Counted from the first letter of the stretch, positions 1-32,842 are shown. The stretch is DNA of 64,000 nt from Asterias rubens (GCF_902459465.1 NC_047078.1:9486001-9550000); one strand, 5' to 3'. Program-made: numbers and translations. Notes: a model not told the origin generated them from the sequence alone.

Positions 1-803
1 TTACTTTTAGAAAGAGAACTTCCATTCTTGTTTTGTTTTAACAAATCAAATCTCACAGGTTACCGGTAAACTGGATATATGTGTTCTTACAATTAAATAA
101 CAAAATAGGCCTACAACAGGATTATACATACAAATATTTTACAGTAAGTTAAACATTAAACGAAAATATATAGCATTTAACCAAGACATTAAATAGTGAA
201 CATTGACAATAAAAAGAAGACCAACTCCACACAAGGTTTAAAAAGATAGGAATTAGGTAAAAGGACAAAAGCCAGATAAGAAAGATTTTTATAAAAAGGA
301 ACAGCATTTAGGTTTCATTAATTAAGAACATCTTTTAACAAGAATAGCAAAAATTGAACAATAATAAGAGACACAAAATATGGAGCTTCTATGTGCACAA
401 CAAAATATGAAAAAGTTACATTAAATATATGAGGCAATTTCAAACAAAACATAGAATGAACCAAAATAAAACAGAATCAGCTTGACGAATATAAAGAGGT
501 ACATGTAACTCATTAAAAGTGTCTTTATAATAAATTATGAGTTTTTTCAACAAGAAGAAAAATGAAGCATCGGGCATGGCAGTGCATGTTTTGGGAGGGG
601 AATTTAATGTTTCATACAAAAGGTCATGTGTGGGTACTCCTAGAACTATGAGGTTTGCTCCCTGCTAGCGTTTGTTTGTAGGGACGACAGCGGAACGAAC
701 CTCTCAGAGTTCAAGGAGTAATGCTTGGTAACAGTTGTTATTTTAGCCTTGTTTTGAGGGGTAATAAACTTTTTTAAGAGAAAAGGAACGTGTGTAAGTT
801 TAC

Positions 804-1493
804 CTCTTCGGTTTTTGGCAAGAAGTCTCTCATGCTCTGACGGCGTCGATTGGCGGCCTCCCTGATGCTGACAGATTCATGCTGGGGGCGGGCGTGTCCC
901 AAGAAGGCGCATTCCAGACAGATCAACTCGCTGCATGTCTCACAGAAGCAGCGGATCTTCTCGCCTGGATGATTCTCACACTCTGGTGCCTTCTTACGGG
1001 CCGGACTCTTCAACTCAATCTTCCCGGTTCGAAGCTCGTCCAACGTTGCGATGGAATGATTCTTGATCATGGCGAAACGCTTGTGGGCCTCGACGCACCC
1101 TTGACACAGGAAGTGATCGCAGTCCATACATCTCGCGATGGCTTCTTTATTCTCATCACACCCGCCGCACTCCAACTTCTTACCCTTAGCACCGAGTAGC
1201 TGATCGTGCAGAACCATCTCCTCGACAACTCCGCTCAAGTGAAGGTTAGACTTCAACCCAGTGATCCCGCCGATTGGCAATTCCGTCTCGTCGCTGCACA
1301 CCGGACACGGGATCCGCGTATTCTTGGGATACTTCATGTTGCGGTATTTCACGAGGCAATCTTCGCAGAAGGTATGGACGCAGTCCATGATTTTGGGCTT
1401 GAAGTAGAAGTTTTGGCAGAGGCCACATTTCAGCGACTCTTTGCTGATTTTGTTCAGCACGGTGCTGGCGGCGTTTTTAAACATCGCAGTCAT
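804..1493 (-). CDS. Tripartite-motif (TRIM/RBCC) E3 ubiquitin ligase, first coding exon (RING + B-box1 + B-box2 + start of coiled-coil); gene continues beyond the window's left edge
   Basis: Translation has a C3HC4 RING (CGLC...CVHTFCEDC...CPVC), B-box1 (CGGC...RCMDCDHFLCQGCVEAHKR) and B-box2 (CENH...FCETCSELICLEC...H...H). Acceptor ttcccgaccacAG lies at 1519-1520 (exon starts 1518, ATG at 1493) and donor GAG|GTAAAC at 803/804, so the ORF-track tail VNLHTFLFS is intronic. Subfamily (TRIM2/3/45/56/71-like) cannot be assigned without the C-terminus. Confidence 0.92.
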
Positions 1494-1630
1494 CTTGGCA
1501 GATGGTTTCTACGCAAATCTGTGGTCGGGAAAAACACAAGTAAAGAATACATAGAACTGGTTATCAATCATATTGATTCATTTCAATCCGGACTCCTATT
1601 GCCCAATAATATTGACTATAGACTTCAACT

Positions 1631-1768
1631 TGGCCCAATTCCATAAAGCTGTTAAGCAGAAAAAAACTGCTTGACAAAATAATTTGTTTGCTAAGCAAAC
1701 ACCAGTCACAGCATGAAAACTTCTGGCTACCAACCTTTTTCTGTGCTTTACAGGCAAATTGGGCCCTG
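1631..1768. mobile_element. MITE family B (TIR GGCCCAATTTCATAGAGCTG(C/T)TAAGCA), short copy
   Basis: ggcccaattccataaagctgttaagcag...caaattgggccctg. Related copies at about 13325-13372, 16572-16950, 25767-26309, 36330-36590, 37470-37660, 39821-40000, 43800-43900, 48791-48860, 50017-50202, 53780-53920, 54175-54340 and 54671-54860. A CTG target duplication is visible at 25764/26310; 3-bp TSDs suggest PIF/Harbinger. Confidence 0.7.
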
Positions 1769-3303
1769 AAATTCTTCCACCCAGATAAATTAACTACTTT
1801 TATGTGAACAAGAATCAGAACAACAAATTAACATCTCAAAAATGCTAAGTCATTGTTGCCCATTTTGATTTGCAGCTATCAATGATCAAAAAAGGTATTG
1901 ATTTGATAATTAGAAATATTTCTGAATCCTGCCACCACTTTTTCACTCATTTTGATTTGACAATATCTCACTATATATAATGATAAACCATGAAACACTA
2001 TATTATTTCATAACGAATACAAAAGTGGTGGCAGGATACATACATTCTTCCTAAAACGGCCCAACCCTTGTCAATGCATTATATCGTGCTAATTTGTTGG
2101 TGACCGCATCAAATTACAAAATACACAACTCGACCATCTGCCAGCGCAACTTTGGTCCCTGGCAACGCCTCGCCCAGCGGGCCAGCAGGAGAGCATACAA
2201 CCCGTACCACACGTTTCACTAAAATTAAAACATCACTGATAAAAAGACGGTAAAATGCATCCTTTATTCACAAATTATACAACAACATACCACTGATAAA
2301 GACTCTCCTTGCTTCCTAATCAACTCCTATTGCGAATAATTAGCTTGTTACTCAACAGAAAACCCTCAAAACATGGGTATTTCGTAGTGAGATTCGGCAA
2401 AAATAGTCAGTAATGACGCGCTGACAAAACACCACGATCTACACCTGTTATTTTTTTAATTATGCTGTGCTAACCACGCATGCGTAAGGTATAACAAAAA
2501 ACCACAGCCTGTGTACACAAATCGTCATTGAATGAATGGAATTTTAGGAATGTGCAAGTGCCACTATGCCTTTTTGTTTGTGACCTTTGGACAAGCTCAA
2601 ATCCTTTGGGCATTACTGGCATTTTTAGGGTGGGTTTAAAAAAATATATTATTGAAATACGATTATTTTTACGTGAGGGCTTGTTTGCGAATAGTTAATT
2701 TTAATTAATAGCTGGAATATTCAAATATTCCAGCTATTAATTTGGTGGAATTGAAGCGCACTGCGACCGACGGAAACTACTGCCGTAGAGATTATTTTTT
2801 CAAATTCGAACCTATTTTTTTTTAAGGAAACACTTTGTGTACGTCGTGCATGTAGGCCTATACCATGTATAATGTAGGCCTGTAGGTATATCGTGTGAAT
2901 TTTCAAAAAAGGCAACAATAATTTGGATGTCATAAAAGTTTTAAAATTTCAAAAAACGGTGAGAATGGAGCCGGACTGAGACAAACTCCCGGCCCGCGAA
3001 ACGCGTAAACAATAAATGTTATCAACAAATATTTTATAAATAACAAATATATATTGATTTATTGTCCAAACCAACAGCGGACAGACCACCAAATTATTAC
3101 AGGAAAGGTAATAAAAGAATAACTTCACCTTTAAATTAACAATAAAACTAATACCTAGTTATCTCCCAGGTACGCGCTTCGCTTCTTTTTCCAAAAGTTG
3201 ACTTTGAACTATGTTTATCTTTTTCATCTAGTTCTTCAAATAGTGTACAAAATTGAGCACATCGCTTCCGATGTCTGATTGCCTCTATGGTTGATGATAG
3301 CTA

Positions 3304-3877
3304 TTAAAGGCACAGTATGTACACGTTTGATAATGCACCCTTCCCATGAAATATGCTAATCCCATTCACGCATAAAAAATACAGACCCTGTTGGTTGGCA
3401 AACGCCATAGAGTTGTGCACTAAGCAGACGCGCAATCGCGTCTGCGTCACGCACCCATTAGCCGTGTACAAAACAGCGCGATGTTTCCTCATTTTGCCAA
3501 CCAAAACGTTAGTGCGCACGCGCTACGTGCAATTTACATATTTCATGGGAAGGGTCCATTGTCAAAGACCACACCCCAACATGAATAAATGCAAACAAAA
3601 TAACAATACTGTAAAAAGATAATTGACTTGGTCATCATTTTTGCAAGAGAATAATGAATGAAAAAAACACCCTTGTTGCATTACTTTGTGGTGCTAAGAT
3701 GTGATAATAACTGGGTGAAGTCTTTTATTATTTTAGTGAGAAATTTCCTCTTTTTAAAAACTAAGTTTTACGGAGCTGTTTCCCACAATGTTTTATACTA
3801 CCAACAGCTCCCCATTGCTCCTTACAAAGTAACAATTATTTTGAATTAGTTACCAACACAGTGTCCAGTGCCTTTAA
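3304..3877. mobile_element. T2/Kolobok-type MITE (family A) carrying a nested palindromic MITE at 3332-3561
   Basis: TTAA-aggcac...gtgtccagtgcct-TTAA ends. The inner element has TIRs aatgcacccttcccatgaaatatg / catatttcatgggaagggtccatt. Confidence 0.7.
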
Positions 3878-4904
3878 ATTTATAACGGTACTACAGTGCA
3901 ATGTGGCAACGCGGTCCAAACTCATTGTCCAAAAGGTCCAAAGTAAATTTTGCCCTGTGTCTGGAATAAAACACGAATTCACATCTGTTCTTTTAAATTC
4001 TTGATGTAACAATCGTGTTTTCCAGCCCCCATTCAAATGTCCAAAACTGCATGCTCCATCTATACATAAAGTTATGGCCCACTTAACCGATTATAAATGT
4101 TACGTATGCGAGTTATTAGAAGTTATTCATAATTTTGTGGTTTGAGGCAGCGGCAAGCCTATATAGGAACTTCACGGTGGAATTCATGAACTTTGAACAG
4201 CAGACGTTATGCAAATACTTCGTTGGTGTCCTGCAGGAACACAACATTTGTAAATGCATTAGATAACGATTATAATGCTTAAGTTTATACTTTTCATTTT
4301 CTATTTAATTTGACTTTACCCAGCCACCAAGCCCTCGGTCATTTACCGCAGGCCCAACCCACACCCATAAAACCTCACTTCACTAAGTCAAACTACAGTT
4401 TGTTTGTATGGCAAAACAGAAGTTAGTGGGGCGCAAGTTGGAACAATTAACTTCATGGAATGTGTTAACTAGTTTCTGTAGAACAAGATTTGTCTGTGCT
4501 TCAAGTTGTTATGCTTATACAATACGGGCTTTTTGTGGGTCATGAGAGTTTTGGGTATAGAGAGGTATACAGTCGCTGTTGTATGGTGTAGGCCTATCTT
4601 CATTTTTTAGTTTGGCTCTAGACATAAAGCATTTTAGTAAATCTTATTTATTGATAACAAAGTTTAATGATAGCAATGTTTGCTATTTCAATGTGTATAA
4701 TGATATGATACAGGGCCTGTATTATATGTAAGCAAAACACGTAAGTCGCTTAAGCCATTTTGATATTACACACTCTGGATAGCCTAATCCGGTCGCCATT
4801 CCAGAGCTGTCACCGCACCCGGAATACTGGTTTTTAAAAGCATGAGTTTAACTTGGATGCTGCGTCGGTTTGACAATGATTGAACATTATTCCTGGTCAC
4901 ACAC

Positions 4905-5045
4905 AGACCCATCACATAGATTTTACAAAGAGTTAGGACTAGTCGTAACTTAGGTCAGGTATAGTCTAGGAAATATTTAAAACTTTAGCTAGTCCTCAGT
5001 AAGGATGAGTTCGAGATAGTCTTAACTCTATGTGAAATCCACCCC
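4905..5045. mobile_element. MITE family C (TIR GGGTCGATTTCACAAAGAG / CCGTCGATTTCAC; internal TAGGACT/AGTCCTAA repeats)
   Basis: Same family at 22025-22170, 24196-24351, 53612-53781 and a tandem pair at 58280-58511. CWG target duplications are seen at 24193/24352 and 58277/58379. Confidence 0.7.
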
Positions 5046-5630
5046 GTGCCCCCTAAAATCCCGAACCGGATTAATTTTCACTGTGAATATCACTGCAACT
5101 TCCTTCACCTACCCTACTGCAAGGAGGCCATAACTCCCGTTTACTCCCAAAATAAAATGGCGGTTGACACTTTGATCCTATCAAGATTTTGAAATCTCAT
5201 TCCCATTCAAACTATATCTGGTGTTCATGAACACTCATTGTAGGTTGTGGAATGCTCGAGGCCATTTGAAAATCTCTATTGTCAGTCAAATTTCGTTTCA
5301 CAAAAGGCTTTATCAAACCCGGAATAACACGTCCCCAGACCGAGTCAATAAAAGACTGCTTGGGAAGCGAGTTGCATACCGTTCGAATAGTCAATAGAGT
5401 ACACAGAACAGCCGGAAATGTCACCTCATGTATAGGTCAAACAGTATTATTCCTCAACTCAAAAATAGAAAAAGCAAAACATAACATAATTTCTCTGAGG
5501 CAACACTCCTTGCAAAATAAATTTTCTCCGACTTTTCCACACTTAAAAAAGTTACTTCTCAATATTGCAAAGTCTCGAGGCAAAGTATACATGGTGTACA
5601 CCATTTTGTTGTTGCAACCGTTTGACTGTA

Positions 5631-6023
5631 AAAAGGCAGTGTACACTATTGGTAATTACTCAAAATAATTATCAGCATACAACCTCACTTGGTAACGAGT
5701 AATGGGGAGAGGTTGACAGTATAAAACATTGTAAGAAACAGCTCTCTCTGAAGTGACGTAGTTGTCGAGAAAGAAGTAATTTTGCACGAATTGGATTTCG
5801 AGACCTCAAGTTTAGAATTTGAGGTCTCGAAATCAAGCATATCAGAAAGCACACAACCTCGTGTGAGAAGGGCGTTTTGTTTTCTTTCATTATTATCTGA
5901 CTTGCAACTTCGACGACCGATTGATTCAACTTTTCACAGGTTTGTAGTTGGATGCATATGTTGAGATACGCCAAGAGAGAAGACTGGTCTTTGACAATTG
6001 CCATTAGTGTCCACTGTCTTTAA
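5631..6023. mobile_element. T2/Kolobok-type MITE (family A)
   Basis: TIR AAAGGCAGTGGACACTATTGGTAATT and internal hairpin GATTTCGAGACCTCAA-loop-TTGAGGTCTCGAAATC. TTAA flanks with AGG termini are the hallmark of T2-family (Kolobok) MITEs. Confidence 0.8.
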
Positions 6024-8980
6024 TGCGGATATTATAATAAAAGGTTTTTATACTATGAAAATTTCATTCAACATGTGCCGTGCGTTTATGGAGGATATCA
6101 CCAAAAATCTCGAGCAGTTTAATACGTCCAATGAGGAAGTAATCGGAGCACACAATCTGATAATCATATCTGACAGCAAATGTTTCTAAGATTCAAACTA
6201 AATTATTCAAACTAATTATCGGCTCAATGCACAAGCTTGCTCTGGTAACCATAACCTTGCTTCTACTATATGGGTCCCTCCACAGTTTCATGAATGTCCA
6301 TGCAATATTATTCATGAAATTACCTGATCAAACATATTAACTTGTTTTTTAAGTTCCAATTTACATTTGATTTAATTTGTTTGATTAAACTGTTTGATTG
6401 GTTGATTGATTGATCGATTGATTGATTGAATGATTCGATATCATTTTCCATAACCAGAGAACTTCAAAGTGCAACGATTGTTAAAATGTTTTAATACCAT
6501 TGAAAGCTGATGTGTATATAGTTTTCCCTTTAAAGTATTTGATATAAAAAAAAAAATTATAATCTGGATGGTCTCTATACGAACGTAAGACAGGTAGTTC
6601 AACTTCTTTACGCATCTACAAGTTAGTTCAAAACACAATTCAGCTGGCAGGTATTGTACGAGGGCAGTGAGACTAAAAGGGTCAAATCGACATAATCAGA
6701 TGGCAATCCATCAATAGAACAGTTTATTTGATTTATGCTCAACAGCTTTTCCAGATGCTTCTGGGTTGATGAACAAAGCGAGACTAGTACCGAGGGAGAG
6801 GAGAACAGGACCCAATGTCAAGGCCGTCTGTCAGCCCCAATTGCCCGTTGGTCCCCTGACGGGAACCAGGAGGTTGGACTCGTATTACCTCTCAAAAAAA
6901 CAAGGATATTTTTCAGGGTTTGGTTTTTGGACATTCCTAAATCTTGACTGCGTTTTAATGCACCCTAAGTGCACAAAAGTGTGAAATCAAAATATATTAT
7001 TTCAAACCAAATAAGTACATGAATTGCGCCCACCATTCAACCCATTAATGGCCACTTTTGTTTCTGAAGTGTGCATCAGTATAATTTTCATTCGTTTCAA
7101 ATGTGCAAAAATTTTGTGGGAATAGTAAAATTATTCCGAATTATTTTTTCTTCGATATTTTTATGTTTCAAACGTTTGTGTTTTTGGAAAAAAAACTCCC
7201 CTTGATTGTACAATTTTACAAAACATGGGCCTGGACACGTTTGCTAATTATACTCAGTCAAAACAAAGGGCTATTTATAGCATACAAACTTGGTAACGAG
7301 AAACGGAGAGCTGTTGACACAATGGTAAACGGCTCCCTCTGAAGTATCAGAATTTTTGAGGAACATGCAATTTCTCAGTCAAATTTGAGTCGAGAAAGAC
7401 TTCAGGCCTATAGACTTTCTCAGGCATCTGAAAACACACACATAATTTTATTGCAGCAAGGTTTTCATGCATTCCCATTGCAACTTCGATGACAAATAAA
7501 CACATAGTCAGATTTACGTCATCAACCGTCATAATAAAACAACCCACATTATTTCTCGGCGCACAATGCATTTCGCTTAGATCATAATTAGCATTCATAT
7601 TATTATTATGAGTCAATAACTCTGTATACAACAGTCATATCAAAGGAATGTGAACTGATTTATATAATAGTTCGTTCTCAATGAAGTATGACTGATGGAC
7701 TGATCATGACAGCACAGTGTTATGAAAATATTAGCAGCAGTCGATTTTTCATTGTAATAATAATAATACCATATTGATTCAGAACAAACAGTCCATTCAA
7801 AAAATGATAATAAAAGAAAAGCAACCTTGGCCTAAATGTGTATGAGTAGGTCTGACAGAAACCTACGGTGATCCTGAAAGGACACGGCAAACATGTGTAC
7901 TTTGCGTTCATGAACTTGTTTGACTGAAATTCAATACACCACGTTCGGAATTGAAGATGGTCTGCCTTCTTCTTAGACGTCAATATATCACAGGAATGTT
8001 TTTACACTAAACACACGCTCAGGTCAAATATAATGGGAGGAGAGTGGTTTTTGTTTTCCCCATGGGATCAAACTTGAATCAGCCACATCAAACTCCGAAA
8101 TTGTTTTGGTTTTTTTGCTTTGTTTTGCTTGTAATCGACTTGAGGAATACCTCATCAAAATTGTAATGATAGATATTTTTACACTGGATTTGCAAAAAAA
8201 AATAGTGATTTGTTTTTAAACAATATTTGTAAAGTGGATGCAATCTAGATTAAAATGGTTTGCATTACTTTTAACTTATTATCCCAAGGTGTACAATTTT
8301 GATTTGTCATTTTTTTTTCTTTCATCTTCATCTTCAGTTCAAAATCTATGGCAAGTAGTATAACGGCAAATTATCTTCAAAAGTTCGTTCGCAATTATTT
8401 CTTTGAACGTGCTTGGACAACACACATTCCCTCGTGCACGGTGGGAAATATTTCCGGCGTATCCTGCCTGGCACCACTTTTTCACTCATTTTTACAAAAG
8501 GAACATCTCATTTTGGGTAAATTAAATACTGCCTTGTTCCACCGAATGAAAAAGTGGTGACGGCAACCTTTGTCTAGTTTTCACATTTTTTTTCAAAATT
8601 TTAGCTGAAATGGTTTTAGCTTACCATGGAGGTAGAAATACAATAAAAACCAATGAATTTAGATATTACAGATAATGTAATAAATATAGTTTGGATAGTC
8701 AATCAGGAAGTTATACACAGCGGTTATTGGCAATTGTCAACCCGTGGATTACTTCAATGTTGAGTTACACCAATAAAGTAATATTCAACAAATTGATCAA
8801 TCAATCAAAGATCAAACCATGGACCTTTTAAGCTCCGTGATCAAATTTCAAATATTTGTTTTAAGAACTTGCCACGCTAGAGTGGATACACTCACTATTG
8901 CACGTCCCCACCCTGTGACAAAATGCACCCATCAAAAGTACCGACCACACACCAAGTAAAACTAATTTCAGGACATTTAC

Positions 8981-9250
8981 CTTCACTATCCGCAGTTAAC
9001 GTATGAACAACCACCGGATAACTTACGATACAATAAGCTATACAAAACAACACTTACCTTTCAAGAAATATTCCGGATTCCAATATTCCACCCAAACCAG
9101 CACTTTGTAATTGGAAAGGGGAGCACTTTATTCCTGTGTCAACCAGTACAAATCAGACACACTTTGCAAGGCAGGGACATACACACACTGAGCCAATACA
9201 TGTACACCAACGGTAACGCTCTTTTTCAAAGGACGCGAGTCTATGAATGG
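8981..9250 (-). other. Putative non-coding 5'-UTR exon (probably of the TRIM gene) with three clustered splice donors
   Basis: Minus-strand donors AAG|GTAAGTG (9057), ATC|GTAAGT (9026) and AAG|GTAAAT (8980). The nearest downstream minus-strand acceptor of a known gene is TRIM at 1519. The upstream boundary is a guess. Confidence 0.3.
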
Positions 9251-9475
9251 GCGTATTCAAAAATAATGTTATTTTGTTAACGGCACGCTAGACTGGTTCG
9301 GTACTGACTCACTGTTATGCCGTGTGAGTCAAAGCACAGTGGCGGGGGTAAGACTGTAAACAAAAATGTGAAAATAATTTAGTGCATTGGACTTCGCTCG
9401 GTAAACGAGACTACATTGTTATTAATAGATAAATGACTGGTGATGTGCTCATGTAGCCCTGGGAAAACAGCTTGT

Positions 9476-9765
9476 TTAAAGGCACTGAACACTCTCGGTA
9501 ATCTTTACTCATGTTTAGCATTTCAGCTGAAGCCTAGTAGTAAAATATGCATCTGAAAGCACACAAAGTAATGCAACAAGTGTGTTATTTTATTAAATCT
9601 ATTGTAAACTCGATGACCAATTTGAGCCCAAGTTTTCACAGGTTTGTTGTTATGTTGAGATAAACCATGGGTGAATAAATTTGACTAATAATTTATTCCT
9701 CCATGGATACACCAAGTGAGAATACTGGTCTTTGACAAATTACCAAACTAGTTTAGTGCCTTTAA
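9476..9765. mobile_element. T2/Kolobok-type MITE (family A), internally deleted
   Basis: TTAA-aggcactgaacac ... gtttagtgcct-TTAA. Confidence 0.7.
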
Positions 9766-11082
9766 AGGGACTATCTCTTGTAGTCACTCTTATGAAAATG
9801 TTTAAAAGTAACTTTTCCCAAGTCAAGATATCAGTGATACTGATAGCCTATTGATCGGAATTCTCGCGTGGTCATGTTATTATGCATCCATAGCGTGTTT
9901 TTAATTCGTATAGTATTTTTTTTTATAAGCGACTTGCAACCAGCATGAAACGAAACCAACAATAAAACTAGGAATGTTGAAACCAAGCCGGGTTAACAGT
10001 AGTCATTGAAGCTACTTAACGGGCAAACAGACAAATAATACTGTGTTATTATTTTCTATTGTGCTGGTGTTTATCTGTACACTCGGTGATAAATATACGG
10101 GTTGCATTTATATGTTGGGTCTAATGTGCAGACTGATATCCTTTACTTGTTGTGCAAGTTAGTAAACGGAATTAAAATAACATCTATTTCATAGCTGTTT
10201 TATTTGAATAAATAATGTAACGGTAATTCATTAAACTGATAATAAATGCATTTAAATGCACTAGACACGTGTAATAATGTAAAAGACCAGTATTCTCACT
10301 TGGTGATCCGAGAGAGAATACTGGTTTTCACTAAAATGCTTGGGGCTCTTCACTTAATGCTAGTTGCTGTCTATACGTGCTTAATATCACCAGATAGAGT
10401 TTGCACAGTAGCATAAAAAAAATGATAGGCCTACTTAATACAGAATAATTTTATGCCTAAAGAAAAACTGCGGATGTTCTTTTGTTGGACATACATTTGT
10501 ATGCTTTCAGACGCTTATAGAAAGGATGCTTGAAGTATTTCAATATGTGTATGAGAAATCACCCTTTTGTCTAAATCTTAACTACGGGGAGGGTACGGAG
10601 CCGTTTTCCCAAATGTTTGATACTATCAACAGCTCTCCTTTGCTCGTTACCAACAAAAGTTTTCATGCTGACGATTTTTTAATAATTACCAAAAGTGCAC
10701 CACTTCTTTAATTGACGCTGTGCACAGAATACAGCAACCCCATCAACAACAGAATACTTTTAAATAGGTGTACAGCTTAAATATAATGTTATTCCTTTCA
10801 GCCTATACATTAAACATAATTTTATTCTCGTCAAATAAGACAAATAACGTCACTCATTGAATTTAATAACATGAAGAAAAAGAAACAACTCAAGAGTTGA
10901 GGTGTGCAACATATTATCATTAACTAGATGTGTTTATTTGTACAAAGATTATATAATGTGAATTCAATAGTTCCTGCTATTCATTCCAATGAGTCGATCA
11001 ATCAAAAATTGGCTTCTAACGGAAAAAACACCAGTAATGAATAAAATGCTACCCAAAGCTTTACAAAAATATACATAATACT

Positions 11083-11468
11083 TTAAAGGCAGTGGACACT
11101 ATTGGTAATTACTCAAAATAATTATTGGCATAAAACCTTTCTTGGTGACGAGTAATGGGGAGAGGTTGATGACATAAAAACATTGTGATAAACGGCTCCA
11201 TCTGAAGTGCCATAGTTTTCGAGAAAGAAGTAATTTTCCACGAATTTGATTTCAAGACCTCAGATTTAGAACTTGAGATCTCGAAATCGACCATCTAAAC
11301 GCACACAACTATGTGTGACAAGGGTTATTTTTCTTTAATTATTATCTCGCAACTTCGATGATCGATTGAGCTCAAATTTTCACAGGTTTGTTATTTTATG
11401 TATATGTTGAATACACCAACCGTGAAGGCTAGTCTTTGACAATTACCAATAGTGTCCACTGCCTTTAA
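11083..11468. mobile_element. T2/Kolobok-type MITE (family A), near-consensus full-length copy
   Basis: TTAA AGGCAGTGGACACTATTGGTAATT ... AATTACCAATAGTGTCCACTGCCT TTAA; about 386 bp. Confidence 0.88.
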
Positions 11469-11780
11469 GTCCAAAATATAATTTTTAGCACAGAAAAAGC
11501 ATCAAACTGTGTATATCTATTAGGCATAATTAGAATATATATTTCGTTTTTCTGCATTGAAGTATGTGTTTTGACGATTCGTTTGGTCTACTCTAGCTCA
11601 GCGGTCACTCAAAAGCCGATGCAAACCGCCCTGGCTGATGGTCCTGGTATGCTGCCTGAAAAGCATACAAAACAAAGACTGAAAGATGTAAACTTGTGGT
11701 TACCAGCCAAACCACGTGTACAGTTTATGACTGGTTTGTTAAGCAGAGTAGACATTTCTGTTGAGCAGTTTTATGAAATT

Positions 11781-14700
11781 TTACCCGCAGATTAAAGGTA
11801 TGCCTGCATTATAAAATTATGTTGAGGAAATAAAAAACAATTATTTCAAACTTAAGAATAACGGAAATAATTCGAATAAAATGATAAAAATGATACAGAG
11901 TCCACTGATTTTGATCAAGAAGACCTAGAAAGTCAATTGTTATTATATATCTATATCTATATATATTTGTTTTTGGCGTACGAAAACCATTTATTACAAC
12001 TACAACAAAATCATTTGAAAGACTTACCACCAAATAAATCCAAAAATAAGAAGTGAACGGTTCCAATTGAGATGAAACTACGTTAGTTATGCACATGTTC
12101 CCTATGGGAAGATTATTCCGAAAAGGGTAAACGTATACTCATCTCAGGACTGTATTTTGCAGGGGTTGAACCCCTTGGCGCTTCGGTGTAAAAAAAAAAA
12201 ATCAAAAACAGTGAAACCTTACCATGAATAGACTCGTCTTCCAGTCCGTTGCATATTTCCCGATACTCTGTTGATGCAATCAGGGCGTTGAGGGCGGGAT
12301 TCCACCATGTCGCTAACGTATTATCCTTCCTCATCATCATGCTGTATCCCTGCAAGGAGCACCCATCGATGCGATCTGAGGCTAGCTGAAGGTTATTTTT
12401 TACGCCCAGGAATTCACTGATGAAAACAGCATCCACCTGCAATGAAAACACTACTTGTTATTTTGTTATCAGTCTTCTGCCTAAAGCAAGCAGCTAGTCG
12501 AACGTATTGAGACCAATAATATTACCCGGCGCGGTAGTGATGATAATTAATAACGATCCAGTCCCGGCCAATTTTCTACATTCCGCCTAGGTAGTAAAGA
12601 AACAGGACAGCTCTTTTTAGAACCGAGAAGCCTCTCGAATTCCGAAAAACTACTCCGCGGTATAGTAGAATATAAAGCGAGACAAGTTCTCAAAAGAACA
12701 TGATTTACCTGGCAAGTAGATACACACATGCTGTTACCGCAAACCAAATTGATCCCTCATGCCTCAAATCCCATATGGTTTGATTTCAATGTTGAGAATG
12801 TTCAACTGATAACATCACAAATCTAAAAATGAGGATATAGCCTCGAATCAAAGACGACCTCTGCAGTAATATTATTGTTCATATGTTCATACATGTACCC
12901 ACCTCGCCATTGTTGACTGCTGAGAGTAAATCCTGCTGAGTCAAATAGTTAATAACTCTTCCCTCCGTCAGATCATGGCCCTATAAAAAAAGGATCAGAG
13001 AAATTTCTTTTAGAAGCAAAGCTTGATAGGCATGAGGTCGCAAAAGACATGCATATGCATTGAGACAAAGGATAATAATTACAATTTGGTGAACCAAAAT
13101 TTTAGTCTTGCTTGGTGACGTTTGTTGCCTACATCATTAATGAGTTTTAGGCCGAGATGTTTCAATGTTTCCTATGGAAACAAAACTGTGCTTATTTAAC
13201 ATAATGTTACTGGCAAAAATGTCATGCCATAAACATTGCTTGTGACTGGTATTTAGCTGTTGTTTACTTTGCATAACAACTGATTTGAGTCTTCAATCCG
13301 CGCCGGTAATCTAATTTTACTATTAAGCAAGGATTTTTTTTTTTTGCTTAAGCAGCTCCATGAAATTGGGCACAGGACGAGTGACAGGGGGAGAATGAAT
13401 GACCATGAGGGGCTAAGCCATTGATATTAGTTACATTTATAGCATACATATTTTGTAACTTAAAATAATAATTACCACGACTTCTGTCAGGCTTTGTATG
13501 CAATCTTCATCTTCAATATAGTAGCGTAAAAGACCGATGGTCTTCCCGGTGATGTTACGCCAGTTGAAGGCGCCCTCTGGGGTACCAGACTTCACCATGA
13601 ACACGGCGAGGTGTTTCTTAGCGTGCGCTTCGGTGAACGAGAAAGTGCGCGCACGGCGATATGTAACTGGCCATCCTGAGTGGACAGTAAAAACAAAAGT
13701 CAATCAAAGTTAATTAATCATGAATTAAATAAGTTTGTTCTGTTTTGTTTCTTCTTTCTTAGTCTTTCCAAACACAAGTAGGATATTGCGCCTCCATAAG
13801 ACTGTTTTTCGTTATGTACTGCTAAAGATGGAAATTTAATTATTTGTTGAAACAAAAAGTGGTAAGGGTATGTTTGCTGTCACTGTCACGCTCGACCAAT
13901 TTTAGCACAACATTTCACAGATTAATTGTTTATTTATTTTATGCATATTTTTGGGATACATAAAGTTAGTCTATACTGTCTTTGACAATTGTGAAAATAA
14001 TGTATAGCGCACGATCTACCAACAAGGTATACAAGGTGCTTAAGATACTTTTTTTAAAGAAAGAAAGGTTTTCGAAGTTGTGAAATTCTGAGACCCAATT
14101 ATAAAGCACCTAATAAGGGTACAATGTATACTACGGCGCATTCAACAGCCACTACCAGGAACACCAGGGCGAACCCATTCTCTTAGCGATAAGTGTTACT
14201 GGTATCTTTTAAGTGCATTTTACACAACGCACGGGACCAACGGTTTTAAGTCCCATTCGAAGGTGTCCAAAGCCTTTAATAAAATAAATAACTGTACCTG
14301 TGCATGCATCATACCACCTTCCCAGAAGCCCAATACCGCCTCCCTGTTTCTCGATGTCATCTCCTATAGATTCCCAGCATCGGTTGTAGTCATCCCAGTC
14401 TAGTCGGCAGCTCTTTTGAGCAATCCTACAAACTGTAAACACGTCAACAATGAATTTGATTATTTACAATGTTATAGTCATTGTACTATATAATATTAAG
14501 TAATCATCAGTGTTTTGTTGTGTGAGGTGTCCTAAAGCGACTAGCAAACAAAAAGCTGTGGCGCAGGTTTGGGGATGCCGGCCGGGCAAACGTTTTCTGA
14601 CGTCAGGTGATGAGACTGAAAATTAATAAAAAGGACTCACACGGGATTGACACTTGAGCCAAGTCTGTATACGAGTTGGCGGCAGGGGATATGATGGCTA

Positions 14701-15441
14701 CGACATTTGCTAAGAGTGTTTTATCTATCGTACAACTGCAACTGTAATTTCTGCCATCCTAACCCTTCAAAATCCAATCGAGGTACTTCTTACCTGCGTT
14801 AACGACATCAATGTTGTAGCCTTTGACCTGGCCACTCTCAGGTTCACTGTAGTAAAACAAAGAATTATAACGGTAAAAGTATACAAATAACTTGAAGAAA
14901 CAATAATTAATTTGAAGAAACAATATAGTTTCAAATGGCATGACAGCGTATAGCTTGTTAACTTTTAGCAATTTGTGCTATAGAAGTTTTGAAAGGAAAG
15001 CAAACGAATCTGTTTGTCCTAAATTATTGTTAAATGCATACAAATTAGATGATTTATCAATAATGTGATTGATCTAGAAATTGTCTTTGAACCAAACGCA
15101 CAACGACTTGAATGAGCACTTTCAAGTTTTCAACACAATCAAGTTTACCGCAATAAAATTATACGAGTATTGTACTCTATGGTCACAAAACTTACACGTA
15201 TTCGAGTCTATTACTGTAATCTCCAATAGCAAAAGTCCAAACTCGATCGGTGGTTTCTGGTATTTCAGCCGCTGCTGGAACTATGGAGATTAAATTAATT
15301 AACAGAGATTGCACACAAAGGGCATTTAAAATCAAACATCGTGGAACTTCTAAAGATTACACAGGGAGTTTTGTGTACGGAATTTAATTAAAACAAATAA
15401 CTATTACAAATTATATAAACTTAAACTCCCCTCCCCCCAAA

Positions 15442-15473
<32 letters not shown>

Positions 15474-16018
15474 ATAAAAAAAAATAAAAAAATGAGAGGT
15501 TTAACATGCCTAACAAATTAATTCCTTAATGTGGAAATTAAGTATTGTATAGGCCCTTTAAGTACCTGTATAATACAGGGAAAAGCAGAGATTAATGCTA
15601 TAAATGAATCTGCGTTTAGGTATGAAAAACGAGAAGTGAAACAAATATATCGATTGTTTAGACTGTTAAAGAAATTGCAAAACTTGCACTAACCTGTTTG
15701 TGGAACTGTCATTTCATTTTTAACATCAACGTAAATATTGCCTTTATTGGCAACTCCAATAAACCCGAACAGCAGCGCAAGAGATGCTACTACCAACGCT
15801 ACGACAACCAACGCAGTGCCACCGCATTTCTCTCGGCCACAACAGCCGTACTCCCGACGCTCTACTACACGGTTCATTTTAGCGAAGGTAACCTTAGACG
15901 GGTAATTTCTCTCAGTAGGATTCTCTCCTTGCTTGTTGGTGTTTGTTGTGTCACCATTTTTCGGCAAGATCATGTCCACCTCAGGTACCATAAGAGCTGG
16001 TTGGTTTGTTTCGCTCAT
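11781..16018 (-). CDS. Single-pass (probable type II) membrane protein with an extracellular bacterial-type amino-acid solute-binding domain (SBP_bac_3/PBPb; ArtJ/HisJ/ArtP-like), 370 aa, 8 exons
   Basis: Exons (minus): 16018-15694, 15280-15196, 14846-14794, 14432-14298, 13675-13476, 12980-12903, 12436-12223, 11803-11781. All are GT-AG with consistent phases (1,2,1,1,0,0,1); total 1113 nt, no internal stop. The product has a TM segment TALVVVALVVASLALLFGFIGVA followed by family-3 SBP motifs in order: VWTFAIGDYSNRLEY, VKGYNIDVVNAVCRIA, YDACTGWPVTYRRARTFSFTEAH, LAVFMVKSG, ITGKTIG, AVNNGEVDAVFISE, GYSMMMRKDNTLATWWNPALNALIASTEYREIC. Confidence 0.85.
12530..12750 (-). repeat. Dispersed repeat family I (GGTTTGCGGTAACACCATGTGTGTATCTACTTGCCAGG...)
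   Basis: Recognisable copies at 22228-22360 (+) and 33288-33435 (+). Class not determined. Confidence 0.6.
14090..14275 (-). mobile_element. SINE family H (tRNA-derived head; body ...GGATGGGACGTAAAGCCGTTGGTCCCGTGTGTTG...CCCAGTGCAC...CCGGTGTTCCTGG), partial
   Basis: Shared body with copies at 21765-22010 (+), 40480-40775 (-) and 44735-45045 (+). B-box-like GGGTTCGA heads are present in the 21765 and 40480 copies. Confidence 0.65.
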
Positions 16019-18522
16019 TTTCCACCCTTTTTTCGGCGTATTCTTTGCTATGGTGTGACACAGCCAGTATACTTACGAGAACTGATTCAAGTTTCATGGA
16101 TTTCGCACAAACACAAATACATAACCTTGGGGAATAGCTTGCAAAGAGTATAAGTCGAGACTAGCCCTGCCGGCGGCCTTGCACTTTCGTGTTATGATAC
16201 AGCACAGAGGAAGGCTCCTATAAAAGGGCTAAACTAGAAACCATGATAGCAAGTCTATGTAAAAACGTATTAATTTTTTACTAAAAAGCAATAATAGTCA
16301 ACAATCCGGGCCACATGTTCTACTCCAATGCCTCCATTCATGAGAGAACAATAATTTGAAACGTGTAAAGTTGTGTGCGACATGACCTTACAAGTATCTA
16401 TTGTGTAACTCCCTCTACAGCATTATTTTTTTACGTTGGCTTGATTTCAATTTCTTTTCCAGAAAGTCATGCAGAGACCTCCAGGTTTTACTATTTTGTT
16501 GTGTGGAATCTGAGCTAAACCTCTGCTCATGTTGATTCCTGATCCTCTGTAATCATTTCTGCAGAAATAGAGCCCGATTTAATAAGGCCTGTGTGAGCGC
16601 AACAAATTGCTTAGCATATTGCTTAGCAGGAAAATGGTTATTAGCCAATTTGCATTGTTGTGACTAGTGCCACACCACTAGTCACATAGAAATAAAAATT
16701 CGCTCGTGGCCCAATTTCCCAGAGCTGCTAAGCACATCAATGTGCTTAGCATGAACTTTTTACCTTGATAAAAACTGTATTACCAACCAAAATTCCACGT
16801 GATTTTTCAGGATTTAGCAAACAACAGCCAAATTAATATAAAGCAAAATGCAACAAATGGAAATTTTGGTTGGTAATCCTGTTTTTATACGAACGAAATT
16901 TCATGCTAAGCAAATTTGTGTGCTTAGCAGCTCTATTGAATTAAGCCCTGGTTTCAGCTCTCATCCACTGCAATAACTATATAGTTCTTCAATCGGTGCA
17001 CACTTATTACAACAATACCCATCAAAGTAGTTGAATTCCTTCCTCCGTGTTTGTTTAGTGAATCACTACTTGGAATTCATCGTTCAAACAGGACTAGGGC
17101 ATATGGATATAGCATGCGTGCTTTAGTTAGTACGAAATTGGCACATGAACTTCAAGCACACTGAAGTATGAGGTTACCTATTCGTCGTTGTGTAAAGCAA
17201 TTCATAAGATTTACAATGAAGATATAATGTCATTTTCGATTCGGGTTCGCCCTACTCATTAAACAGTGATGTAATACTATTATATTATAGTGCTGGCCCT
17301 AGGCCAGCTGTGATTGGCTACACACAGGTCACCGACACCACCATTATACACTCGCGTGCCAATAGTATGCAAATTACTATAGTAAGTGTCAATCATCCAA
17401 GTGCATGGATGGATAAACAACTTGGAAAAGTGGCTTCCCGCCTCTTTTGTCCATAATGAGATTTTATCGGTGCTAAAACAATGGGCTGCTTATTATCATG
17501 GAGCAATAAACTAGTATTGCTCCATGTTATTATGCACACAAACGAAAAGTCTGTCACAACAACTTTGACCAATGGCAGTCAAGTGTCATGCGGTATTTTG
17601 CCTGCGTAGTAATGTAGGCCATTTTTTAGTGAACATTGAGAAAAAACATATGCCGCAAATAATTTTTTTTTTCTTTTTTTCTGATCAAAATATTTCCAAT
17701 GAACAAATTTATGCAAGATTTATTTCACAAACTTCTTTTAAAGTCACTAAAATTGTGAAATTTTACGAGCGGATGAATAAGTTTTCGATGTCTTGCATTG
17801 GACCGTAACACAAAATAAACCGCATCACTCAGTCATTCGCCCATCACACAGTGCAGACGTTTTTCCCCGTGCACGCGCGTTGTTACTTTTGCAGCTGAAA
17901 TTCAATGGAAGAGGATTGTGGATTTATGCGGCGACGTCTAAATTTACGAAACTAAATTGACTGGGAATTACTTCACTAGGGCAAAGTGCGTCGGTAAATA
18001 ACCCTTAGCTTCTTCTACTGTCTGTGTGGAATATGACACACTTAAATAAAGGTAAGAAACGTTTTAAATACATAACTACTTTGAGAGTATAGCCTATTCT
18101 AAAAACCGGTTCTATTTAATTTAGAGACAAATAATCAATTTAGGGCAAAATTATATTTTTTTTTGCGGGGCCGGAGATAAGCAGATAGAGCAAGACTAAT
18201 AATAACGTTGCCAAATGTTTTTAGACCGGTGTAAATATTTATCTTTGTTGTATGTGCCTAAGTTGTGGTCATAGGCCCACATGTCAAATTAATTTCTAAA
18301 TAAAACAGATAATTTATTACGCATAATCCTTCTGAAACAAGTGCTGTTTGCGGGGTAAATAAGCACTGAATAATGTCTAGACAATTTAAGTGTTGCACAA
18401 AAATGTTACATTGCTTGACAATACAAAAATCACAGGTAAAAAAAAAAATGGGTGTCCAATCATTCATATAATAATTACAGATAAAAGAACAGGGTGTCAC
18501 CAAAATTAAAACTTGGACTTAC

Positions 18523-31785: not shown

Positions 31786-32842
31786 TTAAAGGCACTGGAC
31801 ACTATTGGTAATCACTCAAAATAACTCTGTAGTGACTTGACAATCTAGACAGCTCTGGAGTGGCTATGGCCAGTTTGCCAAAAAAATGTTGAATTTGGTC
31901 ACAATTTCTTTTAAGGGCAGTGGACACTATTGGTAATTACTCAAAATAATTGTTAGCATAAAAACTTACTTGGTAACGAGTAATGGGGAGCTGACAGTAT
32001 AAAACATTGTGAGAAACGGCTCCCTCTGAAGTAAGTCGGGGATATTTCTCACTAATTGAATATTAGGTAAACAAGTCAGTTTTTAAAGGCACTGGTCCCC
32101 TTTGGCAATTGTCAAAGGCCAGTCTTCTCACTTGGTGTATTTCAGCATTTAAATAACTCAATTGGTCGTCGAAGTTGCGAGAGAACAATGTAGGAAAAAA
32201 CACCCTCGTCGCAAAGGTGCTTTCAGATGTTTGAATTCGAGACGTCAGCTGAGGCCTCGAATTCAATTCATTATATTTTAGAGAGAAATTATACTTCTTT
32301 CTCAAAAACTGCGTTACTTCAGAGAGAGCTGTTTCTCACAATGTTTTATACTATCAACAGCTCTCCTTTGCTCGGTACCAAGTACCTTTGTAATGCTAAC
32401 CATTATTTCGAGTAACTACCAATAGTGTCCAGTGCCTTTTTGGTCATTAATTTTTTGAGTGATACCTTCCCTTTAAAGGCAGTGGACACTATTGGTAATT
32501 GTCAAAGACTAGCCTTTACGGTTGGTGCATCTCAACACAAACATAAAATAATAAACCTGTGAAAATTTGAGCTCAATCGGTCATTAAACTTGCGAGATAA
32601 TAATGAAAGAAAAAACACCCTTGTCAAACGAAGTTGTGTGAGCTTAGATGGTTGATTCGTGAAAATTACTTCTTTCTTGAAAACTAAGGCACTTCATTCA
32701 TTTCATTTCAATACATTTATTTCAGAGGGAGCCGTTTCTCACAATGTTTTATACCATCAACCTCTTCCATTACTCGTCACCAAAAAAGGTTTTATGCTAA
32801 TAAATATTTTGAGTAATTACCAATAGTGTCCACTGCCTTTAA
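31786..32842. mobile_element. Stack of family A MITEs (partial, nested and abutting copies; complete copy about 32473-32842)
   Basis: TIR starts at 31786, 31911, 32085 and 32473. At 32463-32480 a right TIR (taccttccct) and a left TIR (aggcagtggac) share one TTAA. Confidence 0.75.

What the first reader, a model, noticed from the sequence alone, without database searches (positions are those of the whole stretch)
11781..16018. Intron-containing animal gene encoding a stand-alone bacterial-type amino-acid solute-binding protein with no channel
Seen: a clean 8-exon, 370-aa ORF whose ectodomain follows the family-3 periplasmic binding protein motif order (GYNIDVVNAVC, DACTGWPVTYRRARTFSFT, VDAVF, MMRKDNTLATWWNPAL) as one continuous domain. 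Established: in animals this fold is normally seen as the ligand-binding domain of ionotropic glutamate receptors/IRs, where S1 and S2 are split by the M1-P-M3 pore segment; continuous versions are typical of bacterial ABC-importer binding proteins (HisJ/ArtJ/ArgT). No pore segment or ABC permease is present here. Inference: either an old horizontal acquisition that gained 7 spliceosomal introns, or a channel-less iGluR derivative. Either way it points to a poorly characterised surface amino-acid capture or sensing system, plausible in marine invertebrates known to take up dissolved amino acids. Automated pipelines may already label such genes ArtP-like; I cannot check how well the family is described.
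Basis: partly seen in the sequence, partly recalled or inferred. Interest (0 to 1): 0.8.

Follow-up and report, generated by a model that had tools for sequence, protein, structure and literature searches.

The report
Membrane-tethered bacterial-type solute-binding protein, starfish
This starfish gene is real and expressed, and it encodes a cell-surface protein whose outer domain resembles a bacterial nutrient-binding protein; it belongs to an old, unstudied animal gene family that has neither an ion channel nor a bacterial-style transporter attached.

Summary
The gene is real. It lies on the minus strand, has 8 GT-AG exons and is spliced in RNA assemblies. Its last exon (11803-11781) is wrong: transcripts join exon 7 to 11655, so the CDS ends at 11609 and the protein has 378 aa, not 370. 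This protein is identical to Asterias rubens XP_033641402.1, annotated "uncharacterized protein".

It is a type II membrane protein: a 65-aa cytoplasmic tail, one TM helix (residues 66-91) and a roughly 260-aa ectodomain. The ectodomain passes Pfam SBP_bac_3 (35.1 bits; cutoff 26.4) and gives no Lig_chan-Glu_bd hit. A predicted structure superposes on Salmonella LAO at Z 21.4. The best sequence and structure matches listed were all bacterial amino-acid-binding proteins; no eukaryotic iGluR appeared.

The family occurs in all five echinoderm classes and in hemichordates as TM-anchored forms, and in molluscs as secreted, often tandem-domain forms. All seven intron positions match acorn worm and sea urchin, and three or four match a chiton. 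The family is therefore old, not a recent transfer and not an iGluR remnant.

The carboxylate-binding Arg is invariant, but the Asp that binds the amino group in bacterial proteins is never present. The ligand may therefore not be a standard amino acid. Ligand and partner remain unknown.

The parts
15694..16018 (-). Exon 1 coding part (ATG at 16018; residues 1-108 plus 1 nt). Encodes the cytoplasmic tail, the TM anchor and the start of the stalk. The 5'UTR continues without a break to at least 16203-16219.
   Evidence: RNA contigs cover 15694-16203/16219. In-frame stop codons lie upstream of the ATG within that UTR.
15746..15823 (-). Codons for the single transmembrane helix (residues 66-91), a type II signal anchor.
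   Evidence: Kyte-Doolittle 19-residue windows score up to 2.95. AF2 predicts a helix at 67-90. Arg/Lys residues cluster on the N-terminal side. An N-terminal hydrophobic segment is conserved across most of the Ambulacraria sequences aligned.
15196..15280 (-). Exon 2 (85 nt): stalk and first beta-strand of the binding domain (WTFAIGDY...).
   Evidence: The RNA contigs contain 138 nt (85+53) between the exon 1 and exon 4 pieces.
14794..14846 (-). Exon 3 (53 nt): GYNIDVVNA.
   Evidence: Both flanking introns sit at the same position and phase in Ptychodera, S. purpuratus and the chiton Liolophura.
14298..14432 (-). Exon 4 (135 nt): the Cys156-x6-Cys163 pair, which matches HisJ/LAO Cys38/Cys45, and an animal-specific Cys-containing insert ending in WYDAC.
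   Evidence: (contig piece 14297-14432).
13476..13675 (-). Exon 5 (200 nt): TGWPVTYRRARTFSFT with the invariant Arg207 (codon 13653-13655). The chain runs straight on here into the next beta-strands with no interruption; from recalled iGluR architecture (not tested here), this is where iGluRs carry the pore.
   Evidence: (contig piece 13475-13674).
12903..12980 (-). Exon 6 (78 nt).
   Evidence: The length of 78 nt is identical in Ptychodera.
12223..12436 (-). Exon 7 (214 nt): VDAVF...MMMRKDNTLATWWNPAL...YREIC.
   Evidence: (contig piece 12222-12432).
11609..11655 (-). True last coding exon (GSIPGPSARAVCIGF, stop). The 3'UTR continues below 11609 to at least 11443.
   Evidence: RNA contigs of X1, X2 and X3 join 12222/3 to 11654/5. 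The acceptor is TTTTCAG. The C-terminal motif HG..PG....C.GF is conserved in the family. The result is identical to P0089.
11781..11803 (-). It is not used and lies inside intron 7.
   Evidence: No RNA contig piece or depth here: the bin 11785-11981 has depth 0 in X1-X3.
11083..11468 (.). A 386-bp MITE with perfect 28-bp terminal inverted repeats, inserted in the 3'UTR.
   Evidence: Very high word depth and repeat-type joints at exactly 11082/3 and 11468/9. There are 10 copies spanning essentially the whole element in the window plus several shorter partial ones, and the terminal repeats are shown. The organism-B transcript (X3) appears to skip it.

Best explanation
Shown. Window 16018..11609 (minus strand) is the expressed Asterias rubens gene LOC117301490. 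It encodes a 378-aa single-pass type II membrane protein: a 65-aa cytoplasmic tail, a TM anchor at residues 66-91, a disordered stalk of about 25 aa, and an extracellular two-lobe 'Venus-flytrap' domain of the bacterial class II solute-binding fold (Pfam SBP_bac_3). The nearest relatives by sequence and predicted structure are the proteobacterial Lys/Arg/Orn-, His- and Arg-binding proteins (LAO, HisJ, ArtJ).

It belongs to an animal-specific subfamily marked by eight conserved cysteines, a Cys-containing insert and the motifs WYDAC, MMxRKD, WWNPA and HG..PG...C. This subfamily is present in all echinoderm classes and in hemichordates as TM-anchored forms, and in molluscs as secreted single- or tandem-domain forms. 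Intron positions are shared across these groups.

Inferred. The gene descends from a bacterial binding protein acquired before the protostome-deuterostome split. It then gained introns, disulfides and a eukaryotic membrane anchor or signal peptide. It works without an ABC transporter and without a pore.

Mechanistically it most likely closes around a small carboxylate-bearing solute. Arg207, the equivalent of LAO Arg77, would hold the carboxylate in a pocket lined with aromatic residues (Tyr170, Trp201, Tyr252). The loaded domain, held at the cell surface, would then be read by or hand its ligand to an unidentified membrane partner, either a transporter or a signalling protein.

The canonical alpha-ammonium-binding Asp is absent and several pocket positions vary between paralogues. 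The ligands may therefore be amino-acid derivatives, osmolytes or other organic acids rather than plain L-amino acids, and may differ between paralogues.
For: Gene model and expression: all junctions are GT-AG. Spliced contigs of 1.3-1.5 kb occur in X1, X2 and X3, and partly in X7, and span the 5'UTR to the 3'UTR. The protein is identical to XP_033641402.1.

Family: SBP_bac_3 at 35.1 bits versus a cutoff of 26.4 for this protein, and 34-55 bits for five relatives. The best NCBIfam hits are TIGR01096 and ArtJ, far below their cutoffs.

Sequence neighbours: the profile of 37 members gives only bacterial polar-amino-acid binders among the 60 best PDB chains, from E=4e-16. Against E. coli paralogues the family HMM scores ArtJ/HisJ/ArtI/ArgT at 36-53 bits, TcyJ and GlnH at about 20, and GltI not at all.

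Structure: the AF2 ectodomain has pLDDT mostly 85-98. VIA-align gives Z 21.4 to LAO, with 224 residues aligned across LAO residues 1-238. The Foldseek PDB top 50 and the Swiss-Prot top 30 are all bacterial binding proteins.

Age: the animal sequences form one clade (97/96), with Ambulacraria monophyletic (96/93). Seven of seven intron positions are shared with Ptychodera and S. purpuratus, with identical phases in Ptychodera; S. purpuratus phases were resolved for only two introns. Three exact positions plus one within a codon are shared with the chiton.

Pocket: Arg207 is present in 37/37 members; the Asp161 equivalent is never D/E in 37; residues 201 and 252 are aromatic in 36/37 and 33/37. 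The Cys156/Cys163 columns are Cys in HisJ, ArgT, ArtJ, ArtI and in the Aeromonas and Rhizobium proteins.
Against: No ligand, partner or tissue is known, so the functional half of the statement is inference from homology.

The bacterial origin rests on thin bacterial sampling (10 sequences). In the tree the animal clade sits on a long branch (1.1) next to two long bacterial branches, which looks like long-branch attraction. No iGluR ligand-binding domains were in the tree.

SBP_bac_3 scores are only modestly above threshold. Single exons give no Pfam or PDB hit.

Loss of the alpha-amino-binding Asp and of the Ser/Thr of the G-S/T-T carboxylate loop leaves open that the domain no longer binds a small molecule at all, or that it has become an enzyme. 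The SBP-derived cyclohexadienyl dehydratase is a weak PDB hit (E about 1e-4).

Pocket mapping is from sequence alignment only. I had no access to model coordinates.
Confidence: 0.7

Rival explanations
1. Channel-less derivative of an animal ionotropic glutamate receptor: an iGluR gene lost its amino-terminal domain, M1-P-M3 and M4, and S1 and S2 were rejoined.
For: The fold is the same as the iGluR ligand-binding domain. The prokaryotic GluR0 ligand-binding core scores Z 19.0, only slightly below LAO at 21.4.
Against: No Lig_chan or Lig_chan-Glu_bd hit at E<=1 in six family members. No eukaryotic iGluR appears among the 60 best PDB sequences for the family profile, in the 50 PDB structure matches listed by either Foldseek or VIA-align, or in the Swiss-Prot top 30. 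The PDB and Swiss-Prot are, from general knowledge, rich in iGluR entries; this was not checked here. The family shares the HisJ/LAO/ArtJ Cys pair. No intron or scar lies in the continuous exon 5 where, from recalled iGluR architecture, the pore would have been.
Confidence: 0.04
2. Vertical inheritance rather than horizontal transfer: the family descends from a stand-alone binding protein already present in the pre-metazoan eukaryote lineage, with many later losses.
For: The family is old: mollusc and ambulacrarian genes share introns and form one clade. My searches were not designed to find distant eukaryotic relatives. The word-indexed searches scored only a limited candidate set.
Against: No non-animal eukaryote and no chordate, arthropod or cnidarian appeared in any of four searches. 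The closest outgroups by every measure are proteobacterial ABC binding proteins, with a shared subfamily-specific Cys pair.
Confidence: 0.2
3. The domain has changed job and is an enzyme or a purely structural or adhesive surface protein, not a small-molecule binder.
For: The alpha-amino-binding Asp and the G-S/T-T loop residues are lost. SBP_bac_3 proteins are known to have evolved into cyclohexadienyl dehydratase; CDT and its reconstructed ancestors are weak PDB hits. A related domain occurs in the lytic transglycosylase MltF.
Against: Arg207 is invariant in 37/37 and aromatic residues are conserved at pocket positions. This is the pattern expected for a retained ligand site. Binding proteins outrank the enzyme entries by more than ten orders of magnitude in E-value.
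Confidence: 0.1
4. Bacterial contamination or a very recent transfer in this assembly.
For: None beyond the bacterial-type domain.
Against: There are seven spliceosomal introns, which are removed in RNA. The position is chromosomal, in a 13.5-Mb record. Orthologues exist in more than 12 animal genera. No close relative was found in 185,579 prokaryotic species genomes by pattern scan. The best plasmid tblastn identity was 27%.
Confidence: 0.01

Closest known systems
Proteobacterial LAO / HisJ / ArtJ periplasmic binding proteins (TIGR01096 group; Pfam SBP_bac_3, class II, cluster F)
   Same: The two-lobe fold is the same over the whole length (Z 21.4, 224 residues aligned across LAO 1-238). The T-x-x-R carboxylate-binding Arg, an aromatic at the LAO Phe52 position, the Cys38-x6-Cys45 pair and the RKD and C-terminal helix motifs are shared.
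   Different: Sequence identity is only about 17-22%, and the scores are 10-20 times below the family cutoffs. There is no ABC permease or ATPase partner. A type II TM anchor replaces the cleaved signal peptide. Six additional conserved Cys and an insert of roughly 15 residues are present. The alpha-ammonium Asp161 and Ser120/Thr121 are replaced. The gene carries seven introns.
Substrate-binding domains tethered to the membrane in Gram-positive bacteria and archaea (e.g. GlnPQ SBD1-SBD2 of Lactococcus)
   Same: GlnPQ SBD1-SBD2 is the best PDB sequence hit of the family profile (6h30, E=4e-16). Both are tethered at the membrane surface. The tandem repeats of the domain in the mollusc members (2-3 domains) recall SBD1-SBD2.
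   Different: In GlnPQ the domains are fused to the permease they feed. Here the tether is a lone TM helix with a short cytoplasmic tail, and no translocator is encoded.
Ligand-binding domain (S1S2) of ionotropic glutamate receptors, including prokaryotic GluR0
   Same: The clamshell fold is the same (GluR0 core Z 19.0). From general knowledge, both have a conserved Arg for the ligand carboxylate and extracellular exposure on an animal cell.
   Different: The domain is continuous, not split by a pore. There are no Lig_chan or Lig_chan-Glu_bd hits. Eukaryotic iGluRs are absent from all the best-match lists returned. The acidic residue that binds the ligand amino group is missing.
Automatic RefSeq annotations 'L-arginine-binding protein-like', 'arginine-binding periplasmic protein-like' and 'ArtP-like' in echinoderms, hemichordates and molluscs
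   Same: These are the orthologues and paralogues of this gene.
   Different: The names are transferred by similarity only. Arginine binding is untested and doubtful, given the remodelled pocket. I found no paper describing the family.

Membership tests
Pfam SBP_bac_3 (PF00497), class II periplasmic binding protein fold | Score at or above the Pfam gathering threshold over most of the model | tested here: met
   P0089 scores 35.1 bits against 26.4, covering residues 132-353 and model positions 10-125 of 132. Five relatives score 34-55 bits.
Pfam SBP_bac_3 (PF00497), class II periplasmic binding protein fold | Two alpha/beta lobes that superpose on solved members | tested here: met
   AF2 model versus LAO: Z 21.4, rmsd 3.6, 224 residues aligned across LAO 1-238. 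Foldseek E=7e-16.
Amino-acid-binding SBPs of ABC importers (LAO/HisJ/ArtJ type) | Arg that binds the ligand alpha-carboxylate (LAO Arg77) | tested here: met
   Arg207 aligns with Arg77 and is invariant in 37/37 family members, and in 9/10 mollusc-type domains.
Amino-acid-binding SBPs of ABC importers (LAO/HisJ/ArtJ type) | Asp that binds the ligand alpha-ammonium (LAO Asp161) | tested here: not met
   The equivalent is Ser299. The column is N/S/Y/A/P and never D/E in 37 members, and mostly Pro in mollusc-type domains. HisJ, ArtJ and the Aeromonas and Rhizobium proteins have Asp there; E. coli ArgT was misaligned in this stretch.
Amino-acid-binding SBPs of ABC importers (LAO/HisJ/ArtJ type) | Encoded with, or docking on, an ABC permease/ATPase | tested here: not met
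   No permease-like sequence in the 64-kb window. No called neighbouring gene carries a Pfam hit in A. rubens or Acanthaster.
Amino-acid-binding SBPs of ABC importers (LAO/HisJ/ArtJ type) | NCBIfam TIGR01096 or ArtJ score above the curated cutoff | tested here: not met
   26.7 bits against 256, and 24.3 bits against 510.
Amino-acid-binding SBPs of ABC importers (LAO/HisJ/ArtJ type) | Cys38-x6-Cys45 pair of the HisJ/LAO/ArtJ subgroup | tested here: met
   Cys156 and Cys163 occupy the same columns. They are Cys in 36/37 members and in HisJ, ArgT, ArtJ, ArtI and the Aeromonas and Rhizobium proteins.
Ionotropic glutamate receptor / IR | S1 and S2 separated by M1-P-M3, plus M4 (Pfam Lig_chan) | tested here: not met
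   There is a single hydrophobic segment, N-terminal to the domain. Transcripts are 1.3-1.5 kb with a stop at 11609. No Lig_chan hit.
Ionotropic glutamate receptor / IR | Ligand-binding domain closer to iGluR domains than to bacterial SBPs (Pfam Lig_chan-Glu_bd) | tested here: not met
   No PF10613 hit at E<=1. No eukaryotic iGluR appears in the PDB profile top 60, the 50 PDB structure matches listed, or the Swiss-Prot top 30. A joint phylogeny was not done.
Ionotropic glutamate receptor / IR | Intron positions shared with iGluR genes | not tested

The most novel reading that the evidence does not exclude
A bacterial amino-acid-binding protein was captured by an early bilaterian more than 550 million years ago. 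It was turned into a eukaryotic surface (Ambulacraria) or secreted (Mollusca) small-molecule receptor that works with a non-ABC partner. It would then be an unrecognised class of animal chemoreceptor or solute-capture protein for dissolved organic compounds in seawater, diversified by gene duplication (20 or more paralogues in a brittle star) with variable pocket residues around an invariant Arg.
Probability: 0.3. Interest if true: 0.8.

Novelty: new variant of a known kind. Interest (0 to 1): 0.55.

Why it matters
As far as I know, the class II binding-protein fold has been studied in animals only as part of iGluR channels. This is a conserved, expressed animal family that keeps the continuous bacterial architecture and shares a HisJ/LAO-type cysteine pair. 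It has been re-engineered for the eukaryotic secretory pathway with a TM anchor or signal peptide, extra disulfides and introns, and it has lasted across Ambulacraria and Mollusca.

The family is a concrete molecular candidate for how soft-bodied marine invertebrates sense or capture dissolved organic solutes. It is also a clean test case for ancient bacterium-to-animal gene transfer followed by domestication. The pipeline name 'arginine-binding' is probably misleading, which matters for anyone using those annotations.

Tried and rejected
Single exon translations gave no informative Pfam hit. Against the PDB they gave nothing or spurious matches to designed 'Cake' repeat proteins. The spliced protein could not be passed by reference, so I used a 71-aa exon 7 query in the all-protein HMMER search. 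That search recovered the full-length database entry.

The alternative last exons were rejected on RNA evidence.

The search for related loci failed with the 37-sequence alignment because no stretch was conserved enough. With the ectodomain alone it found no prokaryotic relative. Plasmid tblastn gave only four weak hits at 24-27% identity.

hmmalign misplaced E. coli ArgT around Asp161. I relied instead on the concordant HisJ, ArtJ, Aeromonas and STM4351 alignments.

The placement of the animal clade next to GltI and a Burkholderia ORF in the tree is treated as long-branch attraction, not as a donor signal.

Literature searches found no description of the family. They covered SBP_bac_3, solute-binding with HGT and echinoderm, arginine-binding periplasmic protein with echinoderm terms, PBP with iGluR and HGT, and the hemichordate genome paper PMC4729200.

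I could not add iGluR ligand-binding domains to the tree or compare iGluR intron positions, because no tool supplied those sequences.


Full report
**1. The observation**

On the minus strand between 16018 and about 11600 there is a multi-exon gene. It has eight exons with GT-AG borders and gives a 370-aa product containing every quoted motif. tblastn of that product against the window finds only these exons, so there is no second copy in the 64 kb.

I laid the contigs of four public runs on 10800-16700. Single spliced contigs of 1476 nt (X1), 1342 nt (X2) and 1403 nt (X3) contain the pieces 15694-16203, 14297-14432, 13475-13674 and 12222-12432. The unlisted stretches between these pieces have exactly the lengths of exons 2+3 (138 nt) and of exon 6.

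The contigs then continue at 11654 and below, not at 11803. The real acceptor is TTTTCAG|G at 11655. The frame then reads GSIPGPSARAVCIGF and stops at 11609.

In-frame stop codons lie upstream of the ATG inside the contiguous 5'UTR. The contigs carry no further coding exons.

The corrected protein is identical to P0089 = XP_033641402.1, 'uncharacterized protein LOC117301490 [Asterias rubens]'. Its annotated span of 4410 nt on LR699108.1 equals 11609-16018.

X3 comes from a second, coded organism. It carries a 3-nt deletion at 15862, the position where the A. amurensis orthologue P0002 lacks one Val. The gene is thus transcribed and spliced the same way in a sister species.

**2. What the protein is**

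Hydropathy shows one strong hydrophobic segment, residues 66-91. AlphaFold models it as a helix at 67-90. It follows 65 hydrophilic residues and a cluster of Arg/Lys and Cys (RVVERREYGCCGREKC), so I read it as a type II signal anchor with the C-terminal domain outside the cell. The eight conserved cysteines and an N-I-T sequon at residue 240 in the ectodomain fit that orientation. The orientation itself is inferred.

Single exons were too short to hit any profile. The full-length protein passes Pfam SBP_bac_3 at 35.1 bits (gathering score 26.4), over residues 132-353. No other family appears at E<=1, which excludes Lig_chan-Glu_bd. Five relatives behave the same way. In NCBIfam the best models are TIGR01096 (Lys/Arg/Orn binding protein) and ArtJ, but at 24-36 bits against cutoffs of 256-510. 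This is a very divergent relative, not an orthologue.

A profile of 37 family members finds 61 PDB sequences at E<=0.01. The 60 shown are dominated by bacterial polar-amino-acid or opine binding proteins, from GlnPQ SBD1-SBD2, STM4351, ArtJ and HisJ to LAO. Two designed coiled-coil chains and several engineered or ancestral proteins also appear. There is no eukaryotic iGluR.

The AF2 model built on that alignment is confident in the ectodomain, with most 10-residue blocks at 85-98. Its best matches are LAO (VIA-align Z 21.4, 224 residues aligned across LAO 1-238), the SAR11 Arg/Lys binder, GlnBP and NocT. The prokaryotic GluR0 core appears at rank 33 with Z 19.0. From general knowledge Swiss-Prot holds many animal and plant iGluRs, yet its 30 best matches are all bacterial binders, led by Arg, His and LAO proteins. 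The ESM Atlas neighbours are also bacterial SBP_bac_3 clusters.

The family HMM scores E. coli ArtJ, HisJ, ArtI and ArgT and two plasmid-borne relatives at 36-58 bits. It scores TcyJ and GlnH at about 20 bits and does not score GltI. The alignment shows why. GYNIDVVNAVCRIAQKSCRL lines up with HisJ GFDIDLAKELCKRINTQCTF, including both cysteines. These two columns are Cys in 36 of 37 animal members and in all the HisJ/ArgT/ArtJ-type bacterial sequences sampled.

**3. The family and its age**

Searches returned members from:
- Asteroidea (Asterias, Acanthaster)
- Ophiuroidea (Amphiura, 20 or more paralogues)
- Echinoidea (Lytechinus, Strongylocentrotus)
- Holothuroidea (Apostichopus)
- Crinoidea (Anneissia)
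- Hemichordata (Ptychodera, Saccoglossus, Glandiceps)

Most of the 37 aligned sequences have an N-terminal hydrophobic anchor, a variable stalk and the same eight cysteines; a few start later and lack it.

A more distant branch occurs in molluscs: the chiton Liolophura; Haliotis, Patella, Littorina, Batillaria, Babylonia and Elysia; and Pinctada. The chiton protein has an N-terminal hydrophobic stretch resembling a signal peptide instead of an anchor (my reading), and other members of this branch carry two or three tandem domains. These proteins share the animal-specific insert and the motifs (G)WFDAC, WWNPAF and Y..LC. They score 100-170 bits per domain with the ambulacrarian HMM.

In a maximum-likelihood tree of 44 domains, all animal sequences form one clade (97/96). 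Ambulacraria is monophyletic (96/93) and the mollusc-type domains lie outside it. The window's gene groups with its A. rubens paralogue LOC117301362 and with Acanthaster (100/99). That paralogue lies 9 Mb away on the same chromosome, whereas the two Acanthaster genes are in tandem.

Exact exon maps show that A. rubens, Ptychodera and S. purpuratus share all seven intron positions. The phases are identical in the two fully resolved genes (1,2,1,1,0,0,1). The chiton gene also has eight exons. It shares introns 2, 3 and 6 exactly, including the 50-nt exon 3, and intron 7 within one codon and in the same phase.

I conclude that an intron-bearing ancestor existed before the protostome-deuterostome split. 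Contamination or recent transfer is excluded on several grounds. No close prokaryotic relative turned up, the best plasmid match was 27% identical, and the gene has spliced introns and a chromosomal position.

**4. Origin**

Every outgroup signal points to proteobacterial ABC binding proteins, and none points to iGluRs. No non-animal eukaryote, chordate, arthropod or cnidarian turned up in the searches. I therefore favour an ancient bacterial acquisition followed by domestication and by losses in other phyla.

This remains an inference. My tree has ten bacterial sequences and no iGluR domains. The animal clade sits on a long branch beside two other long branches. Vertical descent with many losses keeps about 0.2 probability.

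**5. How it probably works**

Shown: the fold, the anchor, and the conservation pattern of the pocket. Arg207 aligns with LAO/HisJ Arg77, the residue that holds the ligand carboxylate, and is invariant in 37/37 members. The column of LAO Phe52 is Tyr, Trp or Phe in 30/37. Trp201 and residue 252 are aromatic in 36/37 and 33/37.

By contrast, the column of Asp161 is Asn, Ser, Tyr, Ala or Pro and never Asp or Glu. This residue binds the alpha-ammonium and is Asp in HisJ, ArtJ and the Aeromonas and Rhizobium sequences, and in STM4351. The G-S/T-T loop is also replaced. Other pocket columns, equivalent to Asp30, Ser72 and Gln122, vary among paralogues.

Inferred: the domain still closes on a small carboxylate-bearing molecule, but probably not in the way bacterial proteins hold a free L-amino acid. 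Paralogues may differ in ligand.

Animals have no SBP-dependent ABC importers (general knowledge), and none is encoded nearby. The loaded domain must therefore act through another membrane partner, or simply concentrate its ligand at the surface.

The pipeline name 'arginine-binding' is not supported by the pocket.

**6. Novelty**

The gene and its orthologues are already in RefSeq under automatic names. I found no paper on stand-alone SBP_bac_3 proteins in animals among 40 papers mentioning that Pfam family, nor in targeted searches or the hemichordate genome paper's list of microbe-like genes.

I class it as a new variant of a known kind: a familiar fold in an unfamiliar architecture, with unfamiliar partner logic and evolutionary setting.

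**7. Limits**

The runs are Logan contigs with coded metadata, so tissue and strand are unknown. Pocket residues were mapped by alignment, not from coordinates. The taxonomic range rests on searches with candidate limits. The iGluR comparison is indirect.

Noticed in passing
window 11083-11468 (also e.g. 57116-57484, 48878-49269, 45840-46178, 38601-38983, 5632-6023, 61729-62122, 32473-32842): A 386-bp MITE with perfect 28-bp terminal inverted repeats (TTAAAGGCAGTGGACACTATTGGTAATT). The window holds 10 copies spanning essentially the whole element plus shorter partial ones, at 67-87% identity, and its word depth in RNA assemblies is extremely high. One copy sits in this gene's 3'UTR and appears to be absent from the sister-species transcript (X3).
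   Followed up: partly
window 774-1493 (-): An ORF of 239 aa with a RING finger followed by B-box-like Cys/His patterns (CGLCQ...C.H.FC..C; C..C......C..C..FLC..C...H). It is probably one exon of a TRIM-like gene next to the SBP gene.
   Followed up: no
window 12573-12769, 13164-13557, 13952-14345: Three further stretches inside introns of the gene have very high RNA-contig word depth (hundreds to tens of thousands). They are presumably other interspersed repeats.
   Followed up: no
window 10800-11107: Separate RNA contigs cover this stretch at depths similar to or higher than the gene's own (about 50-117). It may be the distal 3'UTR beyond the MITE or an independent transcript.
   Followed up: no
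Amphiura filiformis proteins P0009-P0104 (no locus fetched): The brittle star carries at least 20 paralogues of this family. Many lie on the same 60-Mb record, which suggests a tandem expansion. Starfish have two.
   Followed up: partly
If real, bacterial-type binding proteins in this starfish are not a one-off.
   Followed up: no
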